Virus record (IMG/VR): IMGVR_UViG_3300035703_000008
Span: 1 to 64,000 of that record
DNA length: 64,000 nucleotides
Direction: 5' to 3' (one strand)
Below the pieces are notes generated by a model. That model ran no database searches. It saw only the letters and a program-made list of their open reading frames with translations, and had not been told where the DNA came from. The first letter of the stretch is position 1; each line of letters opens with the position of its first letter. Positions 8,845-63,202 of the stretch are shown piece after piece. Both the position numbers and the translations under genes were made by a program.

Positions 8845-10122
8845 ATGAACTATAAAGTAGCAGATATCTCACTGGCCGCTTGGGGCCATCGCGAAATCGC
8901 CATTGCCGAGCACGAAATGCCGGGTCTCATGGCCATCCAGAGCAAGTACCAAGGTCAGCTGCCTTTAAAGGGCGCTCGAATCGTGGGCAGCCTGCACATG
9001 ACCATCCAGACAGCGGTACTGATCAAAGTTCTAGTGGCGCTCGGTGCCGAAGTGCGCTGGAGTTCCTGCAACATCTTCTCTACGCAGGACCATGCTGCTG
9101 CAGCCATTGCTGACCTTGGCATCCCTGTGTTTGCTTGGAAAGGCGAAACCGAAGAAGAATACTGGTGGTGCATCGATCAGACCATCGAGGGCTGGCAGCC
9201 CAACATGATCCTCGACGACGGTCACGATCTCACCGATCGTATCATCACCCGGTATCCTGATCTCGTGCCTGGCATCCTGGGAGTCAGCGAAGAAACCACC
9301 ACAGGTATCCTGCGTCTCAGAGAAAAGGCCGCTGCTGGTCAACTACCATTTCCAGCCTTCAACGTCAACGACTCAGTGACCAAGTCAAAGTTTGACAACC
9401 TCTACGGCTGCCGTGAAAGTCTCGTGGATGGCATCAAGCGTGCCACCGATGTCATGATCGCCGGCAAAGTGGCCGTGGTCTGCGGATTTGGTGATGTGGG
9501 CAAAGGATCCGCTGCTGCCTTGCGCACGCTCAGTGCCCAGGTCTGGGTCACTGAAAGCGATCCCATCTGCGCCCTGCAGGCCGCCATGGAAGGCTATCGT
9601 GTTGTGACCATGGACTGGGCCGCTGACAAGGCCGACATCTTTGTCACAGCCACCGGCAACATCAATGTGATCACACGTGCCCACATGGATGTGATGAAGC
9701 ACAACGCCATCGTATGCAACATCGGCCACTTCGACAACGAAATTGATGTGGCTGCCCTCGATGATCTTGCCTGGGAAGAGATCAAGCCCCAAGTGGATCA
9801 CATCTGCTGGCCTGATGGCAAAAGAATCATTCTCTTGGCCCGAGGACGCTTGGTAAACCTGGGCTGCGCTACAGGACATCCTAGTTTCGTGATGTCAAAT
9901 TCGTTTACCAATCAAGTGTTGGCACAGATCGAGCTGTATCAGAATCATAGAGACTACGATTCAGGAGCAGTGTATGTGTTGCCTAAACGACTCGACGAGG
10001 AAGTAGCTCGTTTGCATCTTGCACAGATTGGTGCCCAGCTCACCGAGTTGACTCCGGCACAGGCCGAATACATCAGTGTGCCTGTGGAAGGCCCTTACAA
10101 GCCCGACGCATATAGATACTAA
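8845..10122 (+). CDS. ahcY: S-adenosylhomocysteine hydrolase
   Basis: [56 protein letters not shown]. Confidence 0.97.
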
Positions 10123-10127
10123 GAACT

Positions 10128-10212
10128 TGCCTTAGGACCGTTGACCCTATGGCCAGTGGGCGGCTGCTGCCCCGATCCTGGATTCGCTACCCCGGCATCG
10201 GAAGTGAGCATA
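10128..10212 (+). ncRNA. candidate structured RNA downstream of ahcY
   Basis: GC-rich intergenic segment folding into three hairpins, with a possible pseudoknot. Confidence 0.4.
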
Positions 10213-10222
10213 TATAATCCAT

Positions 10223-10897
10223 ATGAAACTAGAAATATTAGATCTGTTTGAACCCGGCGAGTGGGATTGGTTAAAACAGGACATGCTGGATCGCATCGAC
10301 GCAGAAGGAGTTGATAGACTCTTTGACGAGAGTTTCGCTGATTCAGTGTGGGGGATCAAAGGCCTGTGTCGAGTGGATCGTCGCGTGGTATTGGCCTACA
10401 ATGATCCGGCTTTCATGATGATAAAACAAATACTGGACCGACATTTTCACGGGTCACAGTGGTTTTATATCGCCTATCAGAGACAGTACATTCCCCACGG
10501 GCTCCATGTCGACATCGGCGATCGACACTATGCCAGCAGTGAAGGTTATAGCCTGGTAATCCCCATGCAACAATCTCCGGAATTCAAATTGTTTCTCTGG
10601 GACAAAAAATTTGACAGCATGGATCAGTTGCAAGAATTTCGCAACGAAATAAAAACACATCCCGAAAAATATATTCCGGTCAACAATCTCAGCCAGGATC
10701 ATCAACTTGCTCATTGCAATCTTGATCTTCCCATCACTGACTATATGGAGCTAGCAGGTATCTATGAGTATAAAATCGGTACCATAGCTAAATTTCCCAA
10801 AAATCATGTTCATGCCAGTCACGACTGGCTGGCGTCCAAAAACCACACGCACAAAGATCTTATCATAATACACAGCATGCCACCTTCCCATGACTAA
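10223..10897 (+). CDS. putative 2OG-Fe(II) oxygenase-like protein
   Basis: YIAYQRQYIPHGLHVD plus HVH; paralogue of 5780..6466. Confidence 0.55.
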   Translation: MKLEILDLFEPGEWDWLKQDMLDRIDAEGVDRLFDESFADSVWGIKGLCRVDRRVVLAYNDPAFMMIKQILDRHFHGSQWFYIAYQRQYIPHGLHVDIGDRHYASSEGYSLVIPMQQSPEFKLFLWDKKFDSMDQLQEFRNEIKTHPEKYIPVNNLSQDHQLAHCNLDLPITDYMELAGIYEYKIGTIAKFPKNHVHASHDWLASKNHTHKDLIIIHSMPPSHD

Positions 10898-12257
10898 TAT
10901 ACACATACCCGTAGAAACTATCCAGCAATGGAAAGCCAGAGTGCTAGATGTCAAAAGCCCCACATTTTGCGGAGCCAAATGGTATCATGCTTCTATGTGG
11001 CTCAACGCTGGAGTGACCACCAGCTGCCACCACAACCCTCCGCATGCCATCGATCGGGAAGCCATTAAAACCAATCCCAGTGCCTTGCACAATACCCCGA
11101 TCAAAAAGCAAGAAAGAGGTATGCTGCAGCGTGGAGAAAAACCCAAGAATTGCCAATTTTGCTGGGTCATGGAAGACCTTGATTCCAACAATGTCAGTGA
11201 TCGGGTATGGCAAAGCACTGTGAGTTCCGAGGAAAGCCTACAATTTGCCTACGAGCAAAGCAACGAAATCGATGTAGCTCCGCATTACCTAGAAGTCAGT
11301 TTCGACCCTACATGCCAGCTGGCCTGCTCATATTGTTGCCCTAGCATATCCAGCAGCTGGGCCAGAGATGTCAAGCAAAACGGTCCCTACCAAAATCTGC
11401 CAACAGATCATCGCAATCACTATATCTATGACGGCAGCGACGCCAGACTGTTTGGCATACAAGAAGTGAATCCCTATGCCGAAGCCTGGTTCCGCTGGTG
11501 GGACACCGAACTACACAAGAGCCTACGGCAGTTAAGGATCACCGGCGGCGAGCCCATGATGAGTCCGCACACTTGGCGTCTTTTAGATTGGCTGGCCAAG
11601 AATCCCAATGAAAGCGAGACACGTATCGAGATGACCACCAATCTCACCTACAACGATGAGATACTGGATCGTTTCCTGGACCATGCCAGTAAAATCAAAC
11701 AACCTATCTGGATCTATACTTCAGGCGAAAGTGTGGGTGCTCGTGCCGAGTACGTGAGAGATGGTCATTCCTGGGAACAATGGCTGAAAAATGTCGAACA
11801 TGTACGCACCAGTGGAGTGATCGAAAATGTCAGTATCTGTGGCACCATGAGCGCGATCAGCAATGATGGGTTCGTGGAGTTCTTGCATTTTCTCTTGGAT
11901 CAGAAACGCCAGTACGGTGCCAACTGGATGTTGATGAGTGTGAACTTGGTTCGATTCCCCACGTTCCAAAACATAGTGGTACTGCCCATGGAACTCAGGA
12001 TGGAGTATGCCCGGGAAATCGAAGACTTCATGGCCATACCCGACGTAGAAACTTTGTTTGTGCCATTTGAAAAAGATCACATCAATCGTTACATACGATA
12101 TCTACGCGGTGTGATCAAACCCCACGACGACGCCGACACCAACATTGATGCGTTGCGTCGCGACTTCCGCAGTTTCTTTGATCAGTATGACCAACGCAGG
12201 AACAAGGACTTTTGTGCCACGTTCCCGCGCTTGGCCGATTGGTATCGCAGTCTCTAG
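10890..12257 (+). CDS. radical SAM protein with N-terminal Twitch/SPASM-like Cys cluster
   Basis: CQLACSYC, TGGEP; N-terminal C...CHH...CQFC. Confidence 0.9.
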   Translation: MTNIHIPVETIQQWKARVLDVKSPTFCGAKWYHASMWLNAGVTTSCHHNPPHAIDREAIKTNPSALHNTPIKKQERGMLQRGEKPKNCQFCWVMEDLDSNNVSDRVWQSTVSSEESLQFAYEQSNEIDVAPHYLEVSFDPTCQLACSYCCPSISSSWARDVKQNGPYQNLPTDHRNHYIYDGSDARLFGIQEVNPYAEAWFRWWDTELHKSLRQLRITGGEPMMSPHTWRLLDWLAKNPNESETRIEMTTNLTYNDEILDRFLDHASKIKQPIWIYTSGESVGARAEYVRDGHSWEQWLKNVEHVRTSGVIENVSICGTMSAISNDGFVEFLHFLLDQKRQYGANWMLMSVNLVRFPTFQNIVVLPMELRMEYAREIEDFMAIPDVETLFVPFEKDHINRYIRYLRGVIKPHDDADTNIDALRRDFRSFFDQYDQRRNKDFCATFPRLADWYRSL

Positions 12258-12958
12258 TTTGTGACTGGCTTGCTGGTGGCCACATAAGGCGCCGTGGGCG
12301 CCTGATACCTCTCCAATGGCACAGCATTTACTGTGAGACCCAGGAGACTGCTATAGCGTATCTCATCGGTGTCGTTGACACCACCGTGCCAGGAATTGTT
12401 GGTGTTGGCATGCCACCATCCGTCACCGTAGGCAGTAGTGATGCGTGTGGGATTATTTCTTTCTAGATCATCCCAGAAAAAACTGCTGAGTCGAGGATCA
12501 TCGTGCTCGCTCCAGTAAACAAGCCCGGTAGCTACCAAAAGGCGATAATCAGTGTGTATATCGTTGACGAACCCAGGTAGGTCTTTGGTGAGTTCACCGT
12601 GTATGGCGCAGTGTTTGAACATGCTGTCTGGCTGCCATCCCCACCAAGACGGGAATTCAGGCAAGCGATCGTACATGGCATCGATGAGCTTGCGCTTGAG
12701 TTCATCCGAGCAGAAATATCTCTGCAGTTCCCAGAGTTTGCGATTTTCCTGGCGTGGCCACAGTACCTTGAACCGCTTGCCAGGCCAGTGATTGATGTTG
12801 ACCTCGCTGGTGGCTCCAAAAGGTTGCCAGTTCTCGCACTCGAACTCTTCTAGTAGCTCATTGCGAGTATAAGGGATATCGATTTTGAGACGAAACAAAT
12901 GACGCTTTTCTTCTACTGCATCCATGCGGATATTAAAACCCGGGAATGATTTTTCCAT
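12254..12958 (-). CDS. 2OG-Fe(II) oxygenase-like protein
   Basis: IHTD...SWHG......R facial triad pattern; start uncertain. Confidence 0.6.
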   Translation of the reverse strand: MEKSFPGFNIRMDAVEEKRHLFRLKIDIPYTRNELLEEFECENWQPFGATSEVNINHWPGKRFKVLWPRQENRKLWELQRYFCSDELKRKLIDAMYDRLPEFPSWWGWQPDSMFKHCAIHGELTKDLPGFVNDIHTDYRLLVATGLVYWSEHDDPRLSSFFWDDLERNNPTRITTAYGDGWWHANTNNSWHGGVNDTDEIRYSSLLGLTVNAVPLERYQAPTAPYVATSKPVTN

Positions 12959-12971
12959 ATATAAAGTTCCA

Positions 12972-14183
12972 ATGAATAAAAATTCTAAACTGTACTGCGT
13001 ATGGGCCGATTCGGGCCTGGCCTTGCACAACAGCGGGCGCACTCTCTTGTGTTGTCACAGTCGTAAATATCTACAGGACGAGAGCGGCAACGATATTTAC
13101 CTACACACCCACTCCCTGGAGCAAAGTCTCGACAGTCCCACACGGCAGGAAATACAGGCGGCCCTGGAACAAGGCGAGCAGCATTGGAACTGCCAGGCCT
13201 GCTGGGACGAGGAATCTGCCGGCAGAGACAGTCGCAGGGTAGTATCCAACCGCATGAATCAACACATAGATACCAGTGGTCGTAATCCCAAGCTCTTGGA
13301 TCTCAAGCTGGGCAACACCTGCAACCTGGCCTGCCGTCATTGCTGGCCCGAAGTTTCCAGCAAGTGGGTCCGAGATTTCTACGAGATCGCTGTGCGGAAG
13401 ACCGGGCAGAGCTATCCTGAATACCTTGCACGCTGGGACTCGATACAAAAGAGCTATGATCGAGACAACGAACCCTTGTGGACACAGTTGCGAGAATACG
13501 TGGATGGCGCCGAGTACATTGATGTGTATGGTGCTGAACCCATGCTGCTGCATCGGCTCTGGGAGATACTGGACTACAGTGTACAATCGGGACACAGTCA
13601 GCATCAAAGCATACATGTCAACACCAACGGAACCATCTGGAATCCCCGATACATCGAGACACTGGGTAAATTCCGTCATGCGCAGATCGATCTCAGCATC
13701 GACGGTGTAGATCAGCACTTCGACTACATACGTTACGGAGAGCCTTGGTCAGTGATGGCCGAGAATCTCGATCGTTACAAGGCCTGGAGTGATCCTCTGC
13801 CCAACGTCAATATCTGTGTGTGTATCACTGTGTTCGCCCTCAATGTCTGGTATCTGCCTGAGCTTTATCGATTTTTCCGAGAACGAAAAATCAGCGTGTT
13901 CTTCAACTTCTTGCACATGCCCCAGTACCTCAATCTCAAGACCTTCCCTGATCCCATCAAACAGGCCATCATAGAAAAACTCGACAGCGTGACCATCGAC
14001 TCGAGGTGGGAGCAAGAGATCCCAGCCGTAAAAAACTTCTTATTGGCCCGAGATCATGACCCCCAGCAACAATGGAAAGATTTCTGCCGTAACACCGATC
14101 ACCTTGACCAACTAAGATCTCAGTCGTTCAGTGACACATTCCCGGAGTTTTGGTCAGTGGTCAAGCCCCATTGGCAAGCCTGA
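12972..14183 (+). CDS. radical SAM protein (Twitch/SPASM-like)
   Basis: CNLACRHC, YGAEP, NTNGT, LSIDG; N-terminal C..CC..CQAC. Confidence 0.9.
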   Translation: MNKNSKLYCVWADSGLALHNSGRTLLCCHSRKYLQDESGNDIYLHTHSLEQSLDSPTRQEIQAALEQGEQHWNCQACWDEESAGRDSRRVVSNRMNQHIDTSGRNPKLLDLKLGNTCNLACRHCWPEVSSKWVRDFYEIAVRKTGQSYPEYLARWDSIQKSYDRDNEPLWTQLREYVDGAEYIDVYGAEPMLLHRLWEILDYSVQSGHSQHQSIHVNTNGTIWNPRYIETLGKFRHAQIDLSIDGVDQHFDYIRYGEPWSVMAENLDRYKAWSDPLPNVNICVCITVFALNVWYLPELYRFFRERKISVFFNFLHMPQYLNLKTFPDPIKQAIIEKLDSVTIDSRWEQEIPAVKNFLLARDHDPQQQWKDFCRNTDHLDQLRSQSFSDTFPEFWSVVKPHWQA

Positions 14184-16019: not shown

Positions 16020-18673
16020 GTTACATCGACGCACTTTTTGATCGCGACCGCGATCGCATACACATCGTGGGCCGGAGAAACGGCGAGCGCTACTACGAAG
16101 ATCATCCGGCCACTTATGTGTTCTACTACGACGACCCCAGGGGCAAGTTCCGCAGCATCTACGGAAACCCAGTGTCGAGATTTTCGAGCAGGAACAACAA
16201 AGAGTTTCGCAAAGAGCTAAGGATTCAAAGCGGCAAGAACACCTACGAAGCCGACATCAATCCTGTGTTCCGATGCTTGGAGGAAAACTACAAAGGACAA
16301 GATGCGCCGCGCTTGCACACCGCGTTCTTTGACATCGAAGTAGACTTTGACCCCGAGCGCGGATTCAGCCGTCCCGAAGATCCGTTCAATCCCATCACTG
16401 CCATCTCGGTATACCTGGACTGGCTAGACCAGCTAGTGACCCTGGTGCGTCCGCCGCGACATATGAGCGCAGAGACCGCACAAGAGATCGCAGCCGAGTT
16501 CCCCAACACGTTTGTATTCCACGACGAAGCCGAACTGCTAGACACTTTCCTTAATCTCATCGAGGATGCCGATGTCTTGAGTGGCTGGAACTCCGAGGGC
16601 TATGATATTCCTTACACCGTGATGCGTACCACACGGGTGATGAGCAAAGACGACACGCGTCGTTTCTGCCTTTGGAATCAACTGCCCAAGCAGCGTACCT
16701 TTGAAAGATTTGGCGCCGAGAACATCACATTCGATCTCATCGGTCGTGTGCATCTCGACTACATGCAACTGTATCGTAAATACACCTATGAAGAACGACA
16801 CAGCTACAGCCTGGATGCCATCGGAGAATACGAAGAACTGGGATCAAAAACAGCCTTCGAAGGAACCTTGGATCAGCTCTACAACCAAAACTGGAAAACC
16901 TTCATCGAGTACAACCGCCAAGACGTGCAGCTCTTGGCAGCCATTGACAAAAAACTGCGTTTCCTGGATCTAGCCAACACACTGGCTCATGAAAACACAG
17001 TGCTCCTACCCACTACCATGGGTGCGGTAGCAGTTACCGAGCAAGCCATCATCAACGAAGCCCACGAACGTGGAATGGTAGTACCTGTCAGAAAGGAACG
17101 CCTCACTGATGAAGACACACAAGCCGCAGGTGCCTATGTTGCTTATCCCAAAAAAGGTATGCACGAATGGATCGGGTCAATCGACATCAACAGTCTATAC
17201 CCGTCAACCATCCGCGCTCTTAACATGGGGCCGGAAACCATCGTAGGCCAGTTGAGGCCCACGATGACTGACCGCTACATCGCAGAAAAGATGCGTGGCG
17301 GTGCCAGTTTCGCGGCAGCCTGGGAGGGCCTGTTCGGCACACTCGAATACATGGCCGTGATGGAACAGCAGCGTGGCACAGAGATCACCATCGACTGGCA
17401 AGATGGCGAGGAAACTGTGCATTCGGCCGCGGAAGTATGGCGCATGATCTTTGATTCAAACCAGCCCTGGATGATATCGGCCAATGGTACTATCTTCACT
17501 TATGAGACCGAAGCCGTGATCCCGGGCTTGCTCAAGCGTTGGTATGCCGAGCGTAAGGACATGCAGAAAAAGCTAAAGGAATCCACTACCAAGGAAGATG
17601 AAGAATACTGGGACAAGAGACAGCTGGTCAAGAAGATTAACCTTAACAGCCTTTATGGCGCTATCCTTAATCCTGGCTGTAGGTTTTTTGACAAAAGGAT
17701 CGGTCAATCCACCACGCTTACCGGTCGTGCCATCGCGCAACACATGGATGCCTATGTAAACGAATGTGTGACTGGCAGCTATGATCACGTTGGTGAGGCC
17801 ATCATCTACGGTGACACAGACTCGTGTTACTTTTCTGCGTGGCCGGTGCTGCAGCGAGAAGTGGCCGAAGGGCGCATGGCATGGTCCAAAGAGACCTGCA
17901 TCCAGCTCTATGACAGCATCGCTGACCAAGTCAATGACTCATTCCCGGGATTTATGGAACGAGCTTTCCACTGTCCCAGGGAGATGGGCTCGGTGATCCG
18001 AGGCGGTCGCGAGATTGTGGGATCCAAAGGCCTGTTCATCACCAAGAAACGCTATGCCGTGATGATCATCGACAAGGAAGGCAAGAGGATTGATGTGCAA
18101 GGTCGGCCTGGACGGGTCAAGGCCATGGGCCTGGATCTCAAGAGATCTGACACGCCGCGTGTGATCCAGGACTTCCTCAGCGACGTTCTCAACGATGTGC
18201 TCACTGGTGTCACAAGAGAGCAAGTGATCGAGAAGATACGTGACTTCAAATACCAATTCTCTGAGCGTCCGGGCTGGGAGAAAGGTTCGCCCAAGCGTGC
18301 CAACAACATCACCATGTATGGCAAGAAAGAAGAGCGAGAAGGCAAAGCCAACATGCCAGGCCATGTGCGGGCGAGTTTGAATTGGAACACTCTACGACGC
18401 ATGAATTCAGACAACTACTCGATGCAGATCGTGGACGGCATGAAAGTGATCGTGTGCAAGCTCAAATCCAATCCCTTGGGCTGGACATCGATCGCGTACC
18501 CCACTGACGAACTGCATCTGCCACAGTGGTTCCGTGATCTGCCATTTGACGACGCCGAGATGGAGGCCACCGTCATAGACGGCAAGATTGACAACCTATT
18601 AGGTGTTTTGGACTGGGATCTTGGGTCGGCTACCAACACCGAAAACACTTTCCAGACCTTGTTTGAGTTCTAG
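16016..18673 (+). CDS. family B DNA polymerase (T4 gp43-like)
   Basis: FFDIEVD exonuclease I motif, DINSLYPS, KINLNSLYG, YGDTDS, KKRY. Confidence 0.97.
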   Translation: MSYIDALFDRDRDRIHIVGRRNGERYYEDHPATYVFYYDDPRGKFRSIYGNPVSRFSSRNNKEFRKELRIQSGKNTYEADINPVFRCLEENYKGQDAPRLHTAFFDIEVDFDPERGFSRPEDPFNPITAISVYLDWLDQLVTLVRPPRHMSAETAQEIAAEFPNTFVFHDEAELLDTFLNLIEDADVLSGWNSEGYDIPYTVMRTTRVMSKDDTRRFCLWNQLPKQRTFERFGAENITFDLIGRVHLDYMQLYRKYTYEERHSYSLDAIGEYEELGSKTAFEGTLDQLYNQNWKTFIEYNRQDVQLLAAIDKKLRFLDLANTLAHENTVLLPTTMGAVAVTEQAIINEAHERGMVVPVRKERLTDEDTQAAGAYVAYPKKGMHEWIGSIDINSLYPSTIRALNMGPETIVGQLRPTMTDRYIAEKMRGGASFAAAWEGLFGTLEYMAVMEQQRGTEITIDWQDGEETVHSAAEVWRMIFDSNQPWMISANGTIFTYETEAVIPGLLKRWYAERKDMQKKLKESTTKEDEEYWDKRQLVKKINLNSLYGAILNPGCRFFDKRIGQSTTLTGRAIAQHMDAYVNECVTGSYDHVGEAIIYGDTDSCYFSAWPVLQREVAEGRMAWSKETCIQLYDSIADQVNDSFPGFMERAFHCPREMGSVIRGGREIVGSKGLFITKKRYAVMIIDKEGKRIDVQGRPGRVKAMGLDLKRSDTPRVIQDFLSDVLNDVLTGVTREQVIEKIRDFKYQFSERPGWEKGSPKRANNITMYGKKEEREGKANMPGHVRASLNWNTLRRMNSDNYSMQIVDGMKVIVCKLKSNPLGWTSIAYPTDELHLPQWFRDLPFDDAEMEATVIDGKIDNLLGVLDWDLGSATNTENTFQTLFEF

Positions 18674-18674
18674 C

Positions 18675-50675: not shown

Positions 50676-50910
50676 TGGATGGACTCGAGTTGAGCTCTGG
50701 AACATCGACTATCGAGAAATTTCTGGTATCATACAATCGGCCAAGGGGCTTGGTCTCATCATCAACCAAGACTTTTCCATCACTGTGATACCGGCCTGGA
50801 CCAATCGGGATCTACATGGCCGCGATGAAAAATCCATAATCGTGGCTTTCCGGGACCCGGCTTGGGCAACATGGTTCCAACTCAAACAGCCGAGATCAGA
50901 TGTCCACTAA
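50659..50910 (+). CDS. hypothetical protein
   Basis: C-terminal F.DP..ATWF.LK. Confidence 0.5.
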   Translation: MTITSDGWTRVELWNIDYREISGIIQSAKGLGLIINQDFSITVIPAWTNRDLHGRDEKSIIVAFRDPAWATWFQLKQPRSDVH

Positions 50911-52167: not shown

Positions 52168-52250
52168 AATGTTATGTATCTGATCTGCCCAGACAGGTTG
52201 ATTTATCATGGTCGGCATGCTAGAATCGTCATAACTATCTGGAGACTGCA

Positions 52251-52526
52251 ATGAAATGGCTTAAACGACGGATCTATCGTTGGGTACAAGACGTGCGCAA
52301 CGAAGAAGAAAAAGCACAGGTCCTGACCTGCGAAGAATCGCCCACCTGGAGCGACGGCCTGCGTATCACAGTGAAACGGGTGATAGGTGGCAATATCGTG
52401 AGCTTCCGAACCTATGATCGTCGCAGAGACGAGAGCAACGAGCGCCACTACATCATCACTGATGATCAGGACTTCGATCGCGAACTGGGCAAGATGATCA
52501 CCATGGAATCCATGCGCAACACATGA
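52251..52526 (+). CDS. hypothetical protein
   Basis: GGAGA RBS. Confidence 0.65.
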   Translation: MKWLKRRIYRWVQDVRNEEEKAQVLTCEESPTWSDGLRITVKRVIGGNIVSFRTYDRRRDESNERHYIITDDQDFDRELGKMITMESMRNT

Positions 52527-53852: not shown

Positions 53853-54416
53853 ATGAACCTTATCAACAAACCCATCCCCGAATTCCGTACCCAGGCCTTC
53901 CACAACGGCAAGTTCGTGGAAGTCTCCAACGAAAGCGTAAAAGGCAAATGGACTGTGTTCATTTTCATGCCCGCGGCATTCACATTCAACTGCCCCACCG
54001 AGATCGAAGATGCTGCCGACAACTATGCTGCTTTCCAAGCAGCCGGTGCCGAAGTCTACATCGTCACGACTGACACACACTTCAGCCACAAAGTATGGCA
54101 CGAGACTAGCCCTGCAGTTGGCAAGGCCCTGTTCCCCTTGGTGGGAGATCCCACCCATGCCATGACCCGAGGATTTGGTGTTCACATCGAAGAAGAAGGT
54201 CTGGCACTGCGCGGCACTTTCATCGTCAATCCCGAAGGCCAGGTCAAGACAGCAGAAGTACACAGCAACGAAATCGCGCGTGATGTGCAAGAAACCCTGC
54301 GCAAGCTCAAAGCTGCACAATACACCGCTGCCAATCCTGGCCAAGTGTGCCCGGCCAAATGGAAAGAAGGTGCTGCCACCATCGCTCCCAGCCTTGACCT
54401 TGTAGGCAAGATCTAA
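53853..54416 (+). CDS. ahpC: alkyl hydroperoxide reductase C (peroxiredoxin)
   Basis: [22 protein letters not shown]. Confidence 0.96.
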
Positions 54417-54617
54417 ATGAACCAATGGCTTCAGGCCAACATAGATGCCCTCACTCACTTGGGCATCTATGCTCTCATCGCTTACATGATCTTCGTGATC
54501 GTGATGATATGCCGCGAGAGTGGTGTGCCCAGGTCTGGAGTGATCTGGGTCTTCATCGCCTTGGGCGGAGGATTTACTGGATGGATAGTCAAAGACATCA
54601 TCCAGTGGTTTTTATAG
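54417..54617 (+). CDS. small membrane protein with two hydrophobic segments
   Basis: Two hydrophobic stretches; directly follows ahpC. Confidence 0.55.
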
Positions 54618-54625: not shown

Positions 54626-55834
54626 ATGAATACCCCGATTTACCTCGACTACTCCGCAACGACCCCTATTGATCCACGGGTTGTGGACGCCATGCTGCCG
54701 TTCCTGCGCCAGGACTTCGGTAATCCAGCCTCGCGCAGCCATGCCTTTGGTTGGCGAGCTGAGGAGGCTGTTGAAGCTGCGCGCCAACAAGTTGCCGATT
54801 TGGTGAACTGCGACGCAAAGGAACTCGTCTGGACCTCTGGCGCTACCGAGTCGATCAACCTCGCACTCAAGGGCGCTGCCCACTTCTACAAAGACAAAGG
54901 CCAACACATCATTTCGGTCAAGACCGAACACAAGGCAACGCTAGACACCTGCCGTGAACTCGAGCGCGAAGGCTATGCGCTCACACTCCTCGATGTGCAA
55001 GAGGATGGCCTCATCGACCTGGCCGCGCTCGAGGCTGCCATGCGTCCCGACACCATCCTGGTCTCGGTCATGCTGGTTAATAACGAGATCGGTGTCATTC
55101 AAGATGTGCAAGCCATTGGTGAGCTCTGTCGGGCGCGCGGCATTATTTTTCACATCGATGCCGCCCAGGCGACCGGCAAGGTTGCGATCGACCTCGCTTC
55201 ACTGAAGTGCGACCTCATGTCTTTTTCGGCTCACAAAACCTATGGCCCCAAAGGGATTGGGGCGCTGTTTGTCCGTCGAAAGCCACGCGTGCGGCTTGAG
55301 CCACTGATTCACGGGGGCGGGCATGAGCGTGGCATGCGCTCTGGAACCCTTCCCACCCATCAAATTGTTGGCATGGGTGAGGCTTTTCGCCTCGCTCAGC
55401 TCGAGATGTCTACCGAGAACGAGCGCATTCGAGCCCTTCGCGATCGGCTGTGGGCAGGTCTCTCAGAAATGGAAGCGGTGTACCTGAATGGAGACCTCGA
55501 CCAGCGAGTGCCGCACAACCTCAATGTCAGCTTCAATTATGTCGAGGGCGAGTCGCTACTCATGGCTGTGAAGGACATCGCTGTCTCATCCGGATCAGCC
55601 TGCACCAGTGCCAGCCTCGAGCCCTCGTATGTCTTGCGTGCCCTTGGCCGCAGCGATGAGCTGGCGCACTCATCCATTCGCTTTTCGGTGGGGCGCTTTA
55701 CCACCACGGAAGAGGTCGACTTCACCATTGCGCTCATGAAAGACCGGGTGGCCAAATTGCGCGAGATGTCTCCCTTGTGGGAGCTCGTGCACGAGGGAAT
55801 CGACCTCAACACCATTCAATGGGCAGCACACTAA
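54626..55834 (+). CDS. iscS: cysteine desulfurase
   Basis: [33 protein letters not shown] end. Confidence 0.97.
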
Positions 55835-55844: not shown

Positions 55845-56474
55845 ATGTTAGAAACCATCTGTGACACCATGCTTGAAGCTTACCGACGCAACTGGATCAC
55901 CAGCCGCGACGGCAATGTTTCGATACGTCATCATGACCGTGACCATTTCTACATCACTCCTTCGGGCGTGCGAAAACAAACTTTACAGCCTGATCAATTC
56001 AAGAAGATTGGGCTGATGTCCAATGGCTCCTGGTCTGAGTTGCCTTACACTGATATCAGTGCCCAACTACGACCCAGTGGGGAAATACCATTGCATTTTG
56101 GTCTTCAGAAGATGATGGGACAGCATGGGCATGATGTGAGAGTGGTCATGCATTTCCATCCCACCTATTGCGTGGCTGCCATGCATGCTGGCATCGAACT
56201 AGCAGACCTGGCCCAGGATTTCCCTGAACTGAGTCGCTATACTCGGGTCGGCAAGAATGTCGGGGACGTTGCCCCCATCAGCCAGGAACTGGCAGATCAA
56301 TGCTTTGAGAGTTTTAAACTAAACAGCCAGGGATTCATCGATTATGACATCGTGGGTATCCGAGGGCATGGTGTGGTCAGTATCGATACATCACCATGGC
56401 GCGCATTCGAGCATATCGAGCGCCTGGAACACATCTGCCAGATCGTGCTGGCGTCAGGAAAAATACAATGCTAG
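55845..56474 (+). CDS. class II aldolase/adducin family protein
   Basis: DGNVS, ITPSG, PSGE..LH, HFHP, RGHGVV. Confidence 0.88.
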   Translation: MLETICDTMLEAYRRNWITSRDGNVSIRHHDRDHFYITPSGVRKQTLQPDQFKKIGLMSNGSWSELPYTDISAQLRPSGEIPLHFGLQKMMGQHGHDVRVVMHFHPTYCVAAMHAGIELADLAQDFPELSRYTRVGKNVGDVAPISQELADQCFESFKLNSQGFIDYDIVGIRGHGVVSIDTSPWRAFEHIERLEHICQIVLASGKIQC

Positions 56475-57961
56475 ATACCGCTATCAAACAACAACTAGCT
56501 CAATACCTTGCCTTGATGGAAGGTGACATCACTGTCCGGGTCAGTGCCGGCGACAACCGCGAAATGACCGAACTGGTCAATGAACTGGCTTCAATGTCCT
56601 CGAAGATACATGTAGAGCAGGCCGAATTGCCACACACTCCCAGTTTCCAAATCGGTGACCGCGTGACATTTGCAGGCGTGCCCATGGGACACGAATTCAC
56701 TAGCCTGATCATGGCCTTGCTACAGGTCAGCGGACGCCGGCCCAAGATCGAAGACAAAATCGTCGATCAGATCAAAGCGATCCGCGGCGACTATGAGTTC
56801 ACTACCTACATCAGTCTTTCGTGCCACAACTGTCCGGATGTGGTGCAAGCACTCAACATCATGTCAGTGCTGAATCCCGGTATCCGTCATGTCATGGTGG
56901 ATGGGGCCGAGTTCAAGGCCGAAGTGGAGGCCAAAAACATCATGGCCGTGCCTTATGTGGAACTCAACGGCGAAGCATTTGGATCTGGTCGCATGACCGT
57001 GGAAGAGATCTTGGCTAAAATGGGTAGCCAAGCCGATGTGTCAGACATCGATGGTCGTGAGTATGATGTGTTAGTCATAGGTGGCGGTCCCGCTGGCGCC
57101 AGTGCTGCCGTGTATGCTGCCCGCAAAGGCATCCGCACTGGGATCGTGAGTGAACGCTTTGGCGGACAAGTAATGGACACCATGGGCATCGAGAACCTGA
57201 TCGGTACACGGTACACAGAAGGTCCCAAGCTCGTGGCACAGTTAGAAGAACATGTACGAGAGTATCCCGTAGACATCCACAACCTACAGCGTGCTAAAAG
57301 CATCAAACGCAACAAACTTGTAGAAGTAGAACTGGAGTCAGGTGCCACGCTACGATCAAAGACTGTGATCATCGCCACAGGTGCCCGCTGGCGTAATCTC
57401 GGCGTGCCCGGTGAGGCTGAATTCCGGAACCGCGGTGTTGCCTACTGTCCGCACTGCGACGGTCCTTTGTTCAAAGGCCGGCATGTTGCTGTGATAGGTG
57501 GTGGCAACTCGGGAGTTGAAGCAGCCATTGACCTCGCCGGCATCGTGAGTCATGTCACTGTGTTCGAATTCATGCCAGACCTCAAGGCCGACGCTGTGCT
57601 ACAGCAACGACTCTTCAGCCTACCCAACGTCACTGTATTAAAGAATGTGCAGGTCACTGAGATCCTAGGAGATCAACGAGTCATGGGCATGACCTATCAA
57701 CAACGCGACACCGGTGAGGTCAAACAGATCGATCTAGCCGGTGTGTTTGTGCAGATTGGTCTGGTGCCCAATACCGAGTTTGTGGACGTGGACAAGGATC
57801 GTTTTGGCCAGATCGTTGTTGATTCCCACGGTGCCACATCAATGCCCGGTGTGTTTGCTGCCGGCGATTGCACCACCGAGCCCTACAAGCAGATCATCAT
57901 CTCAATGGGTGCTGGTGCTGGTGCTGCCTTGGGTGCGTTTGATTACATGATCCGCAACTAA
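56468..57961 (+). CDS. ahpF: alkyl hydroperoxide reductase F
   Basis: CHNCPDVV, GGGPAG, CPHCDGP, GGGNSG. Confidence 0.95.
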   Translation: MLDTAIKQQLAQYLALMEGDITVRVSAGDNREMTELVNELASMSSKIHVEQAELPHTPSFQIGDRVTFAGVPMGHEFTSLIMALLQVSGRRPKIEDKIVDQIKAIRGDYEFTTYISLSCHNCPDVVQALNIMSVLNPGIRHVMVDGAEFKAEVEAKNIMAVPYVELNGEAFGSGRMTVEEILAKMGSQADVSDIDGREYDVLVIGGGPAGASAAVYAARKGIRTGIVSERFGGQVMDTMGIENLIGTRYTEGPKLVAQLEEHVREYPVDIHNLQRAKSIKRNKLVEVELESGATLRSKTVIIATGARWRNLGVPGEAEFRNRGVAYCPHCDGPLFKGRHVAVIGGGNSGVEAAIDLAGIVSHVTVFEFMPDLKADAVLQQRLFSLPNVTVLKNVQVTEILGDQRVMGMTYQQRDTGEVKQIDLAGVFVQIGLVPNTEFVDVDKDRFGQIVVDSHGATSMPGVFAAGDCTTEPYKQIIISMGAGAGAALGAFDYMIRN

Positions 57962-61200: not shown

Positions 61201-61209
61201 TATAAATAC

Positions 61210-61283: not shown

Positions 61284-61291
61284 AGTTTTTT

Positions 61292-61367: not shown

Positions 61368-61374
61368 AGATCAT

Positions 61375-61448: not shown

Positions 61449-61453
61449 AACAT

Positions 61454-61531: not shown

Positions 61532-61558
61532 CAAAAAAACACAAGAAAGGAGGCGATG

Positions 61559-62164
61559 ATGCCAGCAGTATTTCTAGTCAGCGACACGCATTTTGGTCAT
61601 GCCGGCGTGTGTCGCTTCACAAGATCGGATGGTGTGACCAAACTGCGTCCCTGGGACGACGCCGCGGAGATGGATGAAGCCATGATCCGGGCCTGGAACG
61701 AGCGTGTGCGGCCTAACGACAAAGTCTATCACCTAGGCGATGTTGTGATCAATCGCAAATCATTGACGACATTGGCTCGTCTGAATGGCGACAAAGTGCT
61801 CATCCGTGGCAATCACGACATCTTCAAAGATGAGGATTACGCTCCTTACTTCAGGAGCATCCGTGCTTACCATGTCATGAACGGCATGATCCTTAGCCAT
61901 ATCCCTGTTCACGAAGCCAGCCTGGGTCGATTTGGTGTCAACATCCACGGACACTTGCATGCCAACCGAGTGACGCGAGCTAGGGGTGTCAATGCCCGGT
62001 CTGGAGAAATCCAGTACACCGACGAGATTGACCCCAGATACCATTGCGTGTGCGTGGAACAGACTCCGGACTTTGCTCCCATCCTTTTCGAAGACGTGAT
62101 CAAGAGGATCGAAGCCGAAGGCGGTCAAATAGGGTTCCGCAACGGCAATGGTCCGGTGATGTAG
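61559..62164 (+). CDS. calcineurin-like metallophosphoesterase
   Basis: SDTHFGH, HLGD, GNHD, SH.P, HGHLH; AAGGAGG RBS. Confidence 0.9.
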   Translation: MPAVFLVSDTHFGHAGVCRFTRSDGVTKLRPWDDAAEMDEAMIRAWNERVRPNDKVYHLGDVVINRKSLTTLARLNGDKVLIRGNHDIFKDEDYAPYFRSIRAYHVMNGMILSHIPVHEASLGRFGVNIHGHLHANRVTRARGVNARSGEIQYTDEIDPRYHCVCVEQTPDFAPILFEDVIKRIEAEGGQIGFRNGNGPVM

Positions 62165-62167
62165 ATT

Positions 62168-62243
62168 CCGACCGTAGCTCAGTGGATAGAGCATCTGCCT
62201 TCTAAGCAGAGAGTCGCAGGTTCGATTCCTGCCGGTCGGGCCA
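62168..62243 (+). tRNA. tRNA-Arg (TCT)
   Basis: Cloverleaf, CCA. Confidence 0.93.
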
Positions 62244-62461
62244 GTAAAAAGCATATTGCTACAAGTGCAAACAGATTTCGAGACGATGTCATATAATAAT
62301 ACATGCGTTCAAAATCTGTCGTTCCTGTTGTTTTGCTCATACTCTTTGCCTTGGCTCTGATCGCTGTCGGCGAAGTCCTGGAGTGTGTGATGTTGATCAA
62401 TCCCTATGAGACCTGGTGCGATTGATTTTGATCCACTGCCACACAAAGTTTAAATATCCAT

Positions 62462-63202
62462 ATGGCCACTTATACTCGTCAAACCGTTACCCATGTGCAT
62501 CACTGGAGTGATCGCACCTTTACCTTTCGTTGCACACGTGATCGGTCATTCCGATTCGCTGCCGGTGAATTCGTCATGATCGGACTCGAAGTCGAGGGTC
62601 GGGCCGTGCTGCGTGCCTATTCAGTGACCTCGGCGCCCTGGGAAGAAGAACTGGAGTTCCTGTCGATCAAGATCGCCGACGGCGAACTCACCAGCCGACT
62701 ACAACACATACAAGTGGGCGATACCGTGTTGATCGGCGAACGTGCCACCGGTACGTTAAGGAACGAAGCTCTTGCGCCCGGGCGCGATCTCTGGATGCTG
62801 GCCACTGGCACAGGACTGGCACCATTCATGAGCCTGATGCGTGACCTTGACACCATCGAGCGTTGGCAGCATCTACATGTGGTACACAGCGTGAGACATG
62901 GCCAGGACTTGGCCTATCACAACCAGCTGGCGGAGGCCTTTGCCGGCGAAGACCTGCATGACTTGGTGGCCGCCAAACTGGTCTATCATCCAGTGGTCAC
63001 TGGCGAGGGTGCAGCTCGCATCGGCGATCAGCTCAAGTCAGGTCAGTTGGAGTTGGATCCTGATCAGGATCGTGTGATGCTGTGCGGCAATCTCGAGTTC
63101 AATCATGAACTGGCCGAATGGTGCCGCGGTGCAGGCATGACCGAGGGTTTGATGCGTAGGCCTGGTGGCTTCGTGCTGGAACGAGCCTTTGTGGAAAAAT
63201 AA
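62462..63202 (+). CDS. fpr: ferredoxin/flavodoxin-NADP+ reductase
   Basis: RAYS, GELTSRL, ATGTGLAPF, MLCG, ERAFVEK. Confidence 0.92.
   Translation: MATYTRQTVTHVHHWSDRTFTFRCTRDRSFRFAAGEFVMIGLEVEGRAVLRAYSVTSAPWEEELEFLSIKIADGELTSRLQHIQVGDTVLIGERATGTLRNEALAPGRDLWMLATGTGLAPFMSLMRDLDTIERWQHLHVVHSVRHGQDLAYHNQLAEAFAGEDLHDLVAAKLVYHPVVTGEGAARIGDQLKSGQLELDPDQDRVMLCGNLEFNHELAEWCRGAGMTEGLMRRPGGFVLERAFVEK

What the first reader, a model, noticed from the sequence alone, without database searches (positions are those of the whole stretch)
8845..63202. A phage-encoded support network for radical-SAM chemistry
Seen: five Twitch/SPASM-type radical SAM paralogues plus QueE and at least four methyltransferases, together with metK, ahcY, iscS, fpr, dps, ahpCF and a class II aldolase. 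Known: radical SAM enzymes need SAM (MetK), Fe-S sulfur (IscS), low-potential electrons (Fpr/flavodoxin) and protection from peroxide. SAH inhibits methyltransferases, and a class II aldolase acts in 5'-deoxyadenosine salvage. Inference: these host-like genes were acquired to fuel one large, uncharacterised modification programme.
Basis: partly seen in the sequence, partly recalled or inferred. Interest (0 to 1): 0.65.

Follow-up and report, generated by a model that had tools for sequence, protein, structure and literature searches.

The report
Cofactor-supply genes in radical-SAM-rich phage
An uncultured giant phage of freshwater and groundwater Betaproteobacteria carries a dozen unusual radical-SAM enzymes together with host-derived genes for making SAM, clearing its by-products, building iron-sulfur clusters and supplying electrons; the same combination recurs in distant relatives, but complete relatives do without the supply genes.

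Summary
The window is the first 64 kb of a 209-kb IMG/VR jumbo-phage fragment. It encodes four N-terminal-twitch radical SAM proteins (NF033640), one related rSAM/SPASM protein and a divergent QueE-like gene. It also encodes metK, ahcY, iscS, an fpr-like reductase, ahpC, ahpF, a class II aldolase and dps. Dps lies at 2251-2694, outside the stated span. Only three weak methyltransferase-like ORFs were found, not four.

For:
- iscS entered phages at least four times.
- Six of eight large iscS-bearing viral contigs carry 3-18 N-twitch rSAMs.
- A distant relative (G422, PolB 56% identical) has 18 copies plus metK and an fpr-iscS-rSAM gene string. It also has an MTA/SAH-nucleosidase homologue inside its rSAM array.

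Against:
- The two near-complete relatives, with about 10-12 copies each, lack metK, ahcY, iscS and fpr.
- The genes are scattered and differ in age.
- No flavodoxin or IscU was found.
- The aldolase cannot be assigned to a subfamily.

What the rSAMs act on is open; I favour glycan tailoring. This clade also expanded a GT-B (GT10-like) glycosyltransferase family (9 copies). In one bacterial genome the rSAM family sits in an O-antigen locus, one copy sharing an open frame with Wzt.

The parts
2251..2694 (+). dps / ferritin-like protein (outside the finding's span)
   Evidence: PF00210, 64 bits
7671..8804 (+). GT-B (GT10-like) glycosyltransferase family, paralogue 1 of 9 in the record
   Evidence: Paralogue clustering, alignments A2/A3, fold of a paralogue
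8845..10122 (+). ahcY, S-adenosylhomocysteine hydrolase
   Evidence: PF05221 432 bits and PF00670; 70-76% identical to Burkholderiales AhcY
10223..10897 (+). Unknown 224-aa ORF overlapping the start of the next rSAM; paralogue of 5564-6466
   Evidence: no Pfam or PHROG hit
10890..12257 (+). N-terminal-twitch radical SAM (N_Twi_rSAM)
   Evidence: NF033640 286 bits; CX3CX2C at residue 142; no positional orthologue in relatives
12924..14183 (+). N_Twi_rSAM
   Evidence: NF033640 288 bits; no positional orthologue in relatives
18603..19619 (+). Weak methyltransferase-like ORF
   Evidence: PF08242, E 7e-3, below cut-off
20383..21411 (+). Radical SAM with an N-terminal SPASM/twitch-like domain, inserted between two conserved core genes
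   Evidence: PF04055 and PF13186; NF033640 only 35 bits; the flanking genes are adjacent in relatives
23148..23738 (+). Weak methyltransferase-like ORF
   Evidence: PF13489, E 6e-5, below cut-off
24192..25424 (+). N_Twi_rSAM
   Evidence: NF033640 232 bits
28113..29150 (+). NDP-sugar epimerase/dehydratase
   Evidence: PF01370 167 bits, PF16363 152 bits
29147..29728 (+). Short DegT/DnrJ-like aminotransferase ORF
   Evidence: PF01041, E 1e-10, partial
29766..30467 (+). GTP cyclohydrolase I (FolE)
   Evidence: PF01227 136 bits
32239..32616 (+). QueD / PTPS
   Evidence: PF01242
32688..33437 (+). Glycosyltransferase-like ORF
   Evidence: phrog_14945, E 3e-8
35196..35810 (+). Weak methyltransferase-like ORF
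   Evidence: Three Pfam methyltransferase models at E about 1e-3, below cut-offs
37685..38584 (+). QueE-like radical SAM; core gene of the clade
   Evidence: Five QueE equivalog models hit, all below cut-off; present in 10 of 10 relatives at 51-75% identity
38823..39920 (+). metK, SAM synthetase, directly after the QueE-like gene
   Evidence: Three MetK Pfam domains; same position in G007, G422 and G423
39917..41125 (+). GT-B family paralogue
41779..42267 (+). Cytidylyltransferase-like protein
   Evidence: PF01467
45933..46967 (-). GT-B family paralogue
50896..52251 (-). N_Twi_rSAM
   Evidence: NF033640 217 bits
52523..53602 (+). GT-B family paralogue, divergent from the neighbouring rSAM
53853..54416 (+). 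ahpC, host-type; the clade's own peroxiredoxin is a different, 28-31% identical protein
   Evidence: PF00578 107 bits; 80% identical to a Burkholderiales AhpC; only 28-31% to the peroxiredoxin of G007 and G001
54417..54617 (+). DUF2788 small ORF
   Evidence: not next to iscS in 80 bacterial loci
54626..55834 (+). iscS cysteine desulfurase, a recent capture from Burkholderiales
   Evidence: NF010611 735 bits against a cut-off of 548; 81% identical to a Burkholderiales IscS; tree
55845..56474 (+). Class II aldolase/adducin-family protein, subfamily unassigned
   Evidence: PF00596 100 bits; best equivalog MtnB at 46 bits against a cut-off of 137; next to iscS in five other viral contigs
56468..57961 (+). 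ahpF
   Evidence: PF07992 172 bits plus a thioredoxin domain
62462..63202 (+). fpr-like ferredoxin/flavodoxin-NADP reductase
   Evidence: PF00970 and PF00175; PRK10926 full-length match at 140 bits, below cut-off; 46-48% identical to Burkholderiales Fpr

Best explanation
The window belongs to an uncultured jumbo phage whose complete relatives reach about 340 kb. It belongs to a widespread clade whose host is probably a betaproteobacterium of the order Burkholderiales.

The clade, and a wider group around it, is marked by large families of N-terminal-twitch radical SAM enzymes. This fragment has 12, and relatives have up to 18 in tandem arrays. The copies in the window are lineage-specific cassettes inserted among conserved replication genes.

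This strain has also collected cofactor-supply and by-product-removal genes, one at a time and mostly from its hosts:
- metK (SAM synthesis), an old gene sitting right after the QueE-like rSAM;
- ahcY (SAH removal);
- iscS (sulfur for Fe-S clusters), a recent capture;
- an Fpr-like reductase (electrons, through a host flavodoxin or ferredoxin);
- host-type ahpCF and dps (peroxide and iron control).

I infer that these are optional boosters. They would relieve SAM, Fe-S and reductant bottlenecks in an infected cell that must load many oxygen-sensitive rSAM enzymes. They are not obligatory parts of the pathway.

The rSAM enzymes most likely tailor sugars or a glycan, working beside a co-expanded GT-B (GT10-like) glycosyltransferase family and nucleotide-sugar enzymes. 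The product may be linked to host recognition or the cell surface.

Shown: gene identities, copy numbers, origins and distribution across genomes. Inferred: that the supply genes serve the rSAMs, and what the rSAMs act on.
For: Identities.

Clade and host:
- At least 596 IMG/VR contigs carry a PolB at 81% identity or more.
- IscS, AhpC and AhcY are 70-81% identical to Burkholderiales proteins.

rSAM load: 12 copies in G000 and about 10-12 in G001, G002 and G003. Phosso, Atu_ph07, Vibrio 2.275.O and Serratia BF have none.

Recurrence of supply genes in rSAM-rich phages:
- The IscS tree needs at least 4 viral/cellular label changes on well-supported branches.
- Seven of 20 iscS-bearing viral contigs have N_Twi. 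Among the eight that are 75 kb or longer, six have 3-18 copies.
- G422 (GC 33%, PolB 56% identical) has 18 N_Twi copies. It has metK after its QueE-like gene and fpr, iscS and an rSAM-like ORF in a row on one strand. An MTA/SAH nucleosidase homologue sits inside its rSAM array.
- G423 has metK, iscS and the same nucleosidase between two rSAMs.
- iscS sits beside the same aldolase in five contigs that belong to a different IscS lineage from G000's.
- None of the five cultured relatives, four without N_Twi and one with two copies, has metK, ahcY, iscS, fpr or AhpC.

Glycan link:
- A nine-member paralogue family folds as GT-B (pLDDT 92.6). Its best matches are H. pylori alpha-1,3-fucosyltransferase (Z 12.4) and T4 beta-glucosyltransferase (Z 12.2).
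- That family has 6-10 copies in G001-G003 and none in the outgroups.
- In bacterium G116, four tandem N_Twi copies lie beside Wzt, a TylF-type O-methyltransferase and a WbsX glycosyltransferase. One copy shares an open frame with Wzt.
- The N-terminal part of the family profile aligns to the twitch domain of BtrN, and the core aligns to BlsE. Both act on sugars.
Against: - The supply genes are dispensable. G001 (99% complete) and G002 (91%) lack metK, ahcY, iscS and fpr yet keep about 10-12 N_Twi copies.
- G007's 85-kb fragment has metK, ahcY and the aldolase but no N_Twi copy.
- The genes are scattered over 60 kb. Their identity to host proteins ranges from 46% to 81%, so they differ in age.
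- No flavodoxin, IscU or plausible ferredoxin was found in the 209 kb.
- The aldolase matches no characterised subfamily.
- AhpCF and Dps would help any phage under oxidative stress.
- The glycan link is weak outside this clade. G422 has 18 rSAMs and no member of the GT-B family.
- Gene-order proximity of glycosyltransferases and rSAMs in G000 is not significant (P about 0.1-0.18).
- The best PDB sequence match of the rSAM core is a peptide-modifying cyclopropyl synthase, 8VPO.
- The iscS-bearing contigs may share ancestry, so the co-occurrence is not phylogenetically independent.
- There is no expression or biochemical evidence.
Confidence: 0.5

Rival explanations
1. The supply genes are ordinary auxiliary metabolic genes, unrelated to the rSAMs. 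MetK and AhcY keep the methyl cycle running for phage methyltransferases. AhpCF and Dps protect the infected cell from peroxide. IscS and Fpr sustain host Fe-S enzymes in general. The overlap with rSAM-rich genomes exists only because jumbo phages of this group pick up many host genes.
For: - metK and ahcY are already listed as viral auxiliary metabolic genes (bioRxiv 10.1101/2021.01.05.425418).
- Complete rSAM-rich relatives lack these genes.
- The genes are scattered and differ in age.
- The fragment carries many other metabolic genes, including an MFS transporter, two AMP-binding enzymes and a carbamoyltransferase.
Against: - The fpr-iscS-rSAM gene string in G422, and the MTA/SAH nucleosidase inside rSAM arrays in G422 and G423.
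- metK sits beside the QueE-like rSAM in four genomes.
- Six of eight large iscS-bearing contigs are rSAM-rich.
- None of the five cultured jumbo relatives has any of these genes.
Confidence: 0.25
2. One reading: an obligate, co-evolved support network, acquired specifically to fuel a single large rSAM modification programme. This includes the aldolase acting in 5'-deoxyadenosine salvage.
For: The same recurrence and linkage evidence as for the best explanation.
Against: - Near-complete relatives with 10-12 rSAMs lack metK, ahcY, iscS and fpr.
- The aldolase's best equivalog hit is MtnB at 46 bits against a cut-off of 137, and it has only a 43-residue PDB match.
- In G007 the aldolase sits next to the clade's peroxiredoxin with no iscS.
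- No nucleosidase homologue was found in G000.
- Acquisition was piecemeal.
Confidence: 0.12
3. The N_Twi rSAMs modify proteins or peptides, such as virion or tail-fibre proteins or a RiPP-like product, rather than glycans. The supply genes may or may not serve them.
For: - The best PDB sequence match is the RiPP cyclopropyl synthase 8VPO, E 1e-14.
- G422's array holds an Asp/Asn beta-hydroxylase and no GT-B member.
- The conserved tandem cluster lies near tail-fibre-like genes, and one rSAM keeps a conserved neighbour shared with phage RsoM2USA.
- Pelagimyophage host-recognition clusters vary by rSAM cassettes (PMC7029224).
Against: - The bacterial copies lie in an O-antigen locus, one in the same open frame as Wzt.
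- The clade co-expanded a GT-B family.
- No precursor-peptide-like ORFs or RRE domains were noticed, although no dedicated search was run.
Confidence: 0.25

Closest known systems
T4-like marine viral genome TARA_ERS488813_N000010 and other Fe-S-gene-bearing viral genomes (Nishimura et al. 2017, PMC5332604)
   Same: A large phage carrying 12 radical SAM genes together with Fe-S cluster assembly and related genes. The authors proposed that viral Fe-S assembly genes serve viral Fe-S proteins.
   Different: That genome has an A-type carrier or IscU, glutaredoxin and PaaD. This one has iscS, fpr, metK and ahcY. It belongs to a different phage group (T4-like marine versus a relative of Phosso and Atu_ph07). 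Whether its rSAMs are of the N_Twi type was not tested here.
NCBIfam NF033640, 'twitch domain-containing radical SAM protein' (N_Twi_rSAM)
   Same: Four window ORFs and 12 in the record score above the curated cut-off. They share the CX3CX2C motif and four conserved N-terminal cysteines.
   Different: I found no paper that characterises a member. The family was present in only 2 of 401 Pseudomonadota genomes sampled, and its nearest ESM Atlas clusters are viral.
Twitch-domain sugar-tailoring radical SAM enzymes: BtrN (2-deoxy-scyllo-inosamine dehydrogenase) and BlsE (cytosylglucuronate decarboxylase)
   Same: The family profile aligns to BlsE's core (E 2e-10) and to BtrN's twitch domain (E 2e-7). 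Both act on sugars or aminocyclitols; their functions are from my own knowledge.
   Different: In those enzymes the twitch domain is C-terminal, and here it is N-terminal. Identity is low. The top PDB hit is a peptide-modifying enzyme.
Viral methyl-cycle auxiliary metabolic genes (metK, ahcY, mtnN) catalogued by Kieft et al. (bioRxiv 10.1101/2021.01.05.425418)
   Same: The same gene families are found in viral genomes.
   Different: That work frames them as organosulfur metabolism and does not link them to radical SAM enzymes. 'Radical SAM' and 'iscS' do not occur in its main text.
DHAP shunt for 5'-deoxyadenosine salvage (nucleosidase or phosphorylase, kinase, isomerase, class II aldolase)
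   Same: A class II aldolase is present in G000. MTA/SAH nucleosidase homologues sit in the rSAM arrays of G422 and G423.
   Different: No genome examined has both enzymes. The kinase and isomerase were not searched for. The aldolase matches no characterised subfamily. The pathway description is from my own knowledge.

Membership tests
N_Twi_rSAM (NF033640) | Score at or above the curated 170-bit cut-off over the full model | tested here: met
   The four window ORFs score 286, 288, 232 and 217 bits. The ORF at 20383-21411 fails with 35 bits.
N_Twi_rSAM (NF033640) | CX3CX2C radical SAM motif and an N-terminal cysteine-rich twitch domain | tested here: met
   All 13 ORFs have CX3CX2C. C27, C46 and C88 are invariant and C91 nearly so in alignment A1. 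BtrN's twitch domain aligns to profile positions 6-84.
N_Twi_rSAM (NF033640) | Binds [4Fe-4S] clusters and cleaves SAM reductively | not testable with these tools
   Needs anaerobic reconstitution.
QueE (7-carboxy-7-deazaguanine synthase) | Equivalog-level HMM score | tested here: not met
   The best score is 50 bits against a cut-off of 206. Five QueE models hit, all below cut-off.
QueE (7-carboxy-7-deazaguanine synthase) | Pathway context (FolE, QueD) and a cluster-binding cysteine triad | tested here: inconclusive
   FolE and QueD are present. There is no CX3CX2C or CX14CX2C motif; cysteines lie at residues 34, 38 and 83. No QueC or TGT was found in the record, and no TGT in eight relatives.
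IscS cysteine desulfurase | Equivalog HMM cut-off | tested here: met
   NF010611 scores 735 bits against 548, and TIGR02006 scores 720 against 643.
Isc Fe-S assembly system | Scaffold IscU encoded alongside the desulfurase | tested here: not met
   No PF01592 match in the 209 kb. Only iscS was taken from the host operon.
MetK / AhcY | All family domains above the Pfam gathering scores | tested here: met
   MetK N, M and C domains score 105, 148 and 187 bits. AdoHcyase scores 432 and 263 bits.
Fpr (ferredoxin/flavodoxin-NADP+ reductase, PRK10926) | Equivalog cut-off; FAD_binding_6 plus NAD_binding_1 architecture | tested here: inconclusive
   The architecture is met. The match to the model is full-length, but 140 bits is below the 390-bit cut-off. 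No phage flavodoxin or ferredoxin partner was found.
5-deoxyribulose-1-phosphate aldolase of the DHAP shunt | Class II aldolase fold, assignable to a characterised subfamily, with nucleosidase, kinase and isomerase partners | tested here: inconclusive
   PF00596 scores 100 bits. The best equivalog is MtnB at 46 bits against 137. No nucleosidase homologue was found in G000. Kinase and isomerase were not searched.
GT10-like GT-B glycosyltransferase | GT-B two-Rossmann fold | tested here: met
   The AF2 model has pLDDT 92.6. All top Foldseek hits are GT-B enzymes. VIA-align gives Z 12.4 to 2nzx and Z 12.2 to T4 BGT.
GT10-like GT-B glycosyltransferase | Match to Pfam Glyco_transf_10; conserved E...TEK nucleotide-sugar motif | tested here: inconclusive
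   No Pfam hit at E up to 5. E269, E284 and K285 are invariant in alignment A3. Their equivalence to the GT10 motif rests on my memory.

The most novel reading that the evidence does not exclude
A group of jumbo phages runs a largely self-sufficient radical-SAM 'factory' in the infected cell. Arrays of up to about 16 tandem N-twitch rSAM enzymes would carry out a multi-step radical tailoring of a glycan or virion component that no known pathway makes. The phage itself would supply SAM (MetK), Fe-S sulfur (IscS) and electrons (Fpr), and would remove SAH and 5'-deoxyadenosine (AhcY or a Pfs-like nucleosidase). These supply genes would have been captured repeatedly and independently because they limit the yield of that chemistry.
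Probability: 0.3. Interest if true: 0.8.

Novelty: new variant of a known kind. Interest (0 to 1): 0.6.

Why it matters
Radical SAM enzymes are costly. Each needs oxygen-sensitive Fe-S clusters, SAM and low-potential electrons, and each is inhibited by its own by-products. A phage lineage that carries 12-18 paralogues of an uncharacterised rSAM family is therefore unusual. That it has repeatedly captured iscS, fpr, metK and a nucleosidase or ahcY suggests two things. First, an unknown and probably important chemistry. Second, a natural experiment on which cofactor supplies limit rSAM function in vivo.

The finding also gives a handle on NF033640, a curated family for which I found no characterised member. 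Its context in an O-antigen locus, with one copy sharing an open frame with Wzt, makes sugar substrates a testable first guess.

Tried and rejected
- The search for related loci with the rSAM paralogue alignment failed because no conserved stretch was long enough.
- megablast of 19 kb of the window against cultured phages found nothing.
- The first AF2 model of the glycosyltransferase family, from nine sequences with window 7671-8804 first, was poor (pLDDT 50). I replaced it with a deeper alignment.
- Pfam and PDB sequence searches gave nothing for the glycosyltransferase family.
- The permutation test of glycosyltransferase-to-rSAM gene-order proximity in G000 was not significant. I therefore do not claim physical coupling within this genome.
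- A strict regex for methyltransferase motif I found nothing in the candidate methyltransferases.
- Literature searches for the N-twitch family, for rSAMs in jumbo or huge phages, and for rSAMs in O-antigen loci gave no characterised member.
- No RNA runs hold the region, so expression timing could not be examined.
- A motif scan for ferredoxins or rubredoxins gave only off-frame or HNH matches.
- Weak Pfam hits to TcdB_toxin_midN (E 0.009, in the FG-GAP protein) and Binary_toxB (E 0.008, in the 5'-3' exonuclease) are far below cut-offs. I treat them as chance.

Full report
**What the window is.** The 64-kb window is the left end of a 208,932-bp IMG/VR virus record (JGI 3300035703, Ga0310140_0000114). 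CheckV rates it 60% complete. The source run is labelled a subsurface metagenome. Almost all genes read on the plus strand, GC is about 50%, and there are 11 tRNA genes between 49.1 and 63.4 kb.

The record encodes a family B DNA polymerase, terminase, baseplate and tail-fibre-like proteins. The nearest cultured phages by PolB are Sinorhizobium phage Phosso (50% identity) and Agrobacterium phage Atu_ph07 (46%). Both genomes are larger than 460 kb. In IMG/VR at least 596 contigs carry a PolB at 81% identity or more. Among them are near-complete genomes of 343.6 kb (G001, 99% complete) and 315.8 kb (G002, 91%). This is therefore a widespread, uncultured jumbo-phage clade.

| Gene | Coordinates | Evidence |
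|---|---|---|
| ahcY | 8845-10122 | PF05221, 432 bits |
| metK | 38823-39920 | three MetK domains |
| ahpC | 53853-54416 | PF00578, 107 bits |
| iscS | 54626-55834 | 735 bits, cut-off 548 |
| class II aldolase | 55845-56474 | PF00596, 100 bits |
| ahpF | 56468-57961 | PF07992, 172 bits |
| fpr-like reductase | 62462-63202 | both domains; 140 bits, cut-off 390 |
| dps (ferritin-like) | 2251-2694 | PF00210, 64 bits; outside the stated span |

- Four rSAM ORFs pass the curated cut-off of NF033640, 'twitch domain-containing radical SAM protein'. They are 10890-12257, 12924-14183, 24192-25424 and 50896-52251 on the minus strand.
- In this family the auxiliary-cluster domain is N-terminal. That explains why Pfam places a SPASM hit before the radical SAM domain.
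- A fifth ORF (20383-21411) has the same layout but fails the family cut-off.
- The 'QueE' (37685-38584) is only QueE-like. Five QueE models hit it, all far below cut-off. It has no CX3CX2C motif, with cysteines at residues 34, 38 and 83. FolE and QueD are nearby, and the gene is present in all ten clade relatives tested.
- I could not confirm 'at least four methyltransferases'. Three ORFs give sub-threshold class-I methyltransferase hits.

**The rSAM family is much larger than the window shows.** The 209-kb fragment has 12 copies above the cut-off, including five in a tandem cluster at 99.5-108 kb. The paralogues are only 20-31% identical to one another. They share four N-terminal cysteines, CX3CX2C and a few other motifs.

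One orthologue is at least 72% identical across the 120 best of 7,861 matching 90%-identity clusters in metagenomes. Yet among cultured phages the family appears only in RsoM2USA, Vibrio phages K566 and K567, and one marine single-cell virus. It was found in 2 of 401 sampled Pseudomonadota genomes. Its nearest ESM Atlas clusters are viral.

G001, G002 and G003 carry about 10-12 copies each. Phosso, Atu_ph07, Vibrio 2.275.O and Serratia BF carry none.

**The window's own rSAM copies are lineage-specific cassettes.** In 80 relatives' loci around PolB the conserved genes are PolB and the ORFs at 19655, 21408 and 26983, plus ahcY in about nine loci.
- The rSAMs at 10890, 12924, 20383 and 24192 have no positional orthologues.
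- In G007 the gap between ahcY and PolB is 2 kb. In the window it is 5.9 kb.
- The ORFs at 19655 and 21408 abut in relatives. In the window an rSAM sits between them.

**Are the supply genes host-like?** Mostly yes, and their ages differ. Identities to Burkholderiales proteins are as follows.

| Protein | Identity |
|---|---|
| IscS | 74-81% |
| AhpC | 80% |
| AhcY | 70-76% |
| MetK | 55-57% |
| Fpr | 46-48% |
| Aldolase | no match in five genomes |

- In those bacteria metK and ahcY are neighbours. In the phage they lie 29 kb apart.
- Only iscS was taken from the isc operon.
- The ahpC-to-ahpF locus is a turnover hot spot. In G007 a different peroxiredoxin, 28% identical, directly precedes a 90%-identical aldolase, with no iscS or ahpF.

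The result is asymmetric.

Against a tight coupling:
- G001, G002 and G003 have no metK, ahcY, iscS or fpr despite about 10-12 N_Twi copies.
- G007 has metK, ahcY and the aldolase in an 85-kb fragment with no N_Twi copy.

For a real association:
- No IMG/VR IscS is closer to the window's than bacterial ones are.
- A FastTree phylogeny of 121 IscS sequences needs at least four viral/cellular label changes on well-supported branches. The window's IscS groups with a Burkholderiales sequence. It is separate from an 11-contig viral clade that is sister to Polynucleobacter-like sequences.
- Of 20 iscS-bearing viral contigs, seven carry N_Twi rSAMs. Among the eight of 75 kb or more, six carry 3, 4, 5, 5, 9 and 18 copies.
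- In those contigs iscS sits beside the same aldolase (five contigs), beside an fpr homologue (three), near ahcY (one) or near an N_Twi rSAM (one).

I fetched the richest contig, G422, in full (184 kb, GC 33%, PolB 56% identical, 39 of 217 genes shared).
- It has 18 N_Twi copies plus about six weaker rSAM-like ORFs, many of them in one array at 59.6-86 kb.
- metK directly follows its QueE-like gene, as in the window.
- fpr, iscS and an rSAM-like ORF lie in a row on one strand.
- An MTA/SAH-nucleosidase homologue sits inside the array (PF01048, E 8e-15; PDB 4pr3, E 1e-10). In bacteria this enzyme family also removes 5'-deoxyadenosine, the inhibitory rSAM by-product (my own knowledge).

G423 repeats metK, iscS and the nucleosidase, the last between two rSAMs.

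None of the five cultured jumbo relatives has any of these genes; four have no N_Twi copy and one has two. In this sample, supply genes occur only in rSAM-rich phages and are sometimes wired next to rSAMs, but rSAM-rich phages can lack them. The sample is small and the contigs may be related, so this is suggestive and not a statistical demonstration.

**What the 'programme' might be.** An all-against-all comparison revealed a second expanded family of nine paralogues, each 330-400 aa. Four are in the window: 7671-8804, 39917-41125, 45933-46967 (minus strand) and 52523-53602. Two lie between tandem rSAMs. The family has no Pfam or PDB sequence match.
- An AlphaFold2 model of one member is confident (pLDDT 92.6, pTM 0.90).
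- All top Foldseek hits are GT-B glycosyltransferases.
- VIA-align ranks H. pylori alpha-1,3-fucosyltransferase first (Z 12.4, rmsd 4.5 Å over 253 residues) and T4 beta-glucosyltransferase second (Z 12.2).
- The family has 6-10 copies in G001-G003 and none in the five cultured outgroups.

The fragment also encodes other sugar-related genes:
- two NDP-sugar epimerase/dehydratases;
- a DegT-like ORF;
- a cytidylyltransferase;
- a PHROG glycosyltransferase;
- a carbamoyltransferase beside the rSAM cluster.

In bacterium G116, four tandem N_Twi genes lie next to a TylF-type O-methyltransferase, a class-I methyltransferase and a WbsX glycosyltransferase. One copy shares an open reading frame with a Wzt ABC-transporter ATPase that has its O-antigen-binding C-terminal domain. 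In G187 the single copy sits near a GT2 glycosyltransferase and an epimerase. The family profile aligns to BlsE and to BtrN's twitch domain.

These points favour sugar or glycan tailoring, but the case is not closed.
- G422 has no member of the GT-B family.
- Gene-order proximity in G000 is not significant.
- The best PDB sequence hit is a peptide cyclopropyl synthase.
- G422's array contains an Asp/Asn beta-hydroxylase.
- The conserved cluster lies next to tail-fibre-like genes, and one rSAM shares a conserved neighbour with RsoM2USA. Pelagimyophage host-recognition clusters also vary by rSAM cassettes (PMC7029224).

**Comparison with what is known.** The idea that phage Fe-S assembly genes serve phage Fe-S proteins was put forward for marine T4-like genomes, one of which has 12 rSAM genes (PMC5332604). 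metK and ahcY are catalogued as viral auxiliary genes.

Three things appear new: the particular set (iscS, fpr, metK, and ahcY or a nucleosidase); its repeated capture by N-twitch-rSAM-rich jumbo phages; and its occasional direct linkage to rSAM genes. I found no paper describing this clade or characterising NF033640. I therefore rate the finding a new variant of a known kind.

**Verdict.** The exceptions are that dps lies outside the span, the methyltransferases are overstated, and QueE is only QueE-like. The functional theme is plausible and has some comparative support. However, the supply genes are optional, were gained piecemeal, and differ in how specific they are to rSAM chemistry. MetK, IscS, Fpr and the nucleosidase or AhcY are the best candidates. 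AhpCF and Dps are generic, and the aldolase is unassigned. The substrate of the rSAM family is the main open question.

Noticed in passing
window 29766-38584: A 7-deazapurine-type module: FolE, QueD and a QueE-like gene, together with a phosphoribosyltransferase (35801-36319), a PRA-PH/MazG-like pyrophosphohydrolase (36316-36687) and an HhH-GPD protein (36684-37193). No QueC was found in this record. No TGT/DpdA was found in this record or in eight clade relatives. This fits a nucleotide-level route, like tubercidin biosynthesis, better than base exchange in DNA. The tubercidin comparison is from my own knowledge.
   Followed up: partly
G000 about 69.7-74.6 kb (L100:8766-13634): An MFS sugar-type transporter, two AMP-binding (adenylate-forming) enzymes and a hexapeptide-repeat acyltransferase lie in a row. 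This is unusual cargo for a phage.
   Followed up: no
G116:C19:4235-11143 (L190): A bacterial O-antigen-type locus with four tandem N_Twi rSAMs. The first lies in the same 854-aa open frame as Wzt (ABC_tran plus Wzt_C). The locus is flanked by a TylF-type O-methyltransferase, a class-I methyltransferase and a WbsX glycosyltransferase.
   Followed up: partly
G422:C1:59640-86021 (L239, L240): An array of about 16 rSAM ORFs in 26 kb in a 33%-GC jumbo-phage contig. Interspersed are an MTA/SAH nucleosidase homologue, an aminotransferase-like ORF and an Asp/Asn beta-hydroxylase.
   Followed up: partly
window 53853-57961 compared with G007:C1:77508-78637: A gene-turnover hot spot. The clade's own peroxiredoxin, 28-31% identical, stands where this strain has a host-type ahpC (80% identical to a Burkholderiales AhpC). 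DUF2788, iscS and ahpF are added around a conserved aldolase.
   Followed up: yes
G000 106.7-113.8 kb compared with Ralstonia phage RsoM2USA genes 349-355 (L097): Synteny conserved between distant jumbo phages: an N_Twi rSAM and a 307-aa neighbour. The neighbour's domain also ends a 1784-aa protein at 86708-92062. A tail-fibre-like protein with a Peptidase_G2 chaperone domain lies close by.
   Followed up: partly
window 49115-63423: Eleven tRNA genes (Met twice, Tyr, Glu, Gly twice, Asn, Trp, Cys, Arg, Ser) are interleaved with an HNH endonuclease, two metallophosphatases, a 2OG-Fe(II) oxygenase and fpr.
   Followed up: no
G000 about 96.1-97.6 kb (L098:16686-18167): A carbamoyltransferase (Carbam_trans_N and Carbam_trans_C, NodU/CmcH type) lies just beside the tandem rSAM cluster.
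   Followed up: no
G000 about 66.2 kb (L100:5307-5543): A small ORF hits RNA_pol_Rpb6 (the omega subunit family), next to an RNaseH-like ORF and downstream of an N_Twi rSAM.
   Followed up: no
ESM Atlas hit to G000 93157-94317: A 705-aa viral protein cluster appears to fuse the GT-B family fold to an NDP-sugar epimerase/GDP-mannose dehydratase domain (TM 0.69 by the query).
   Followed up: no
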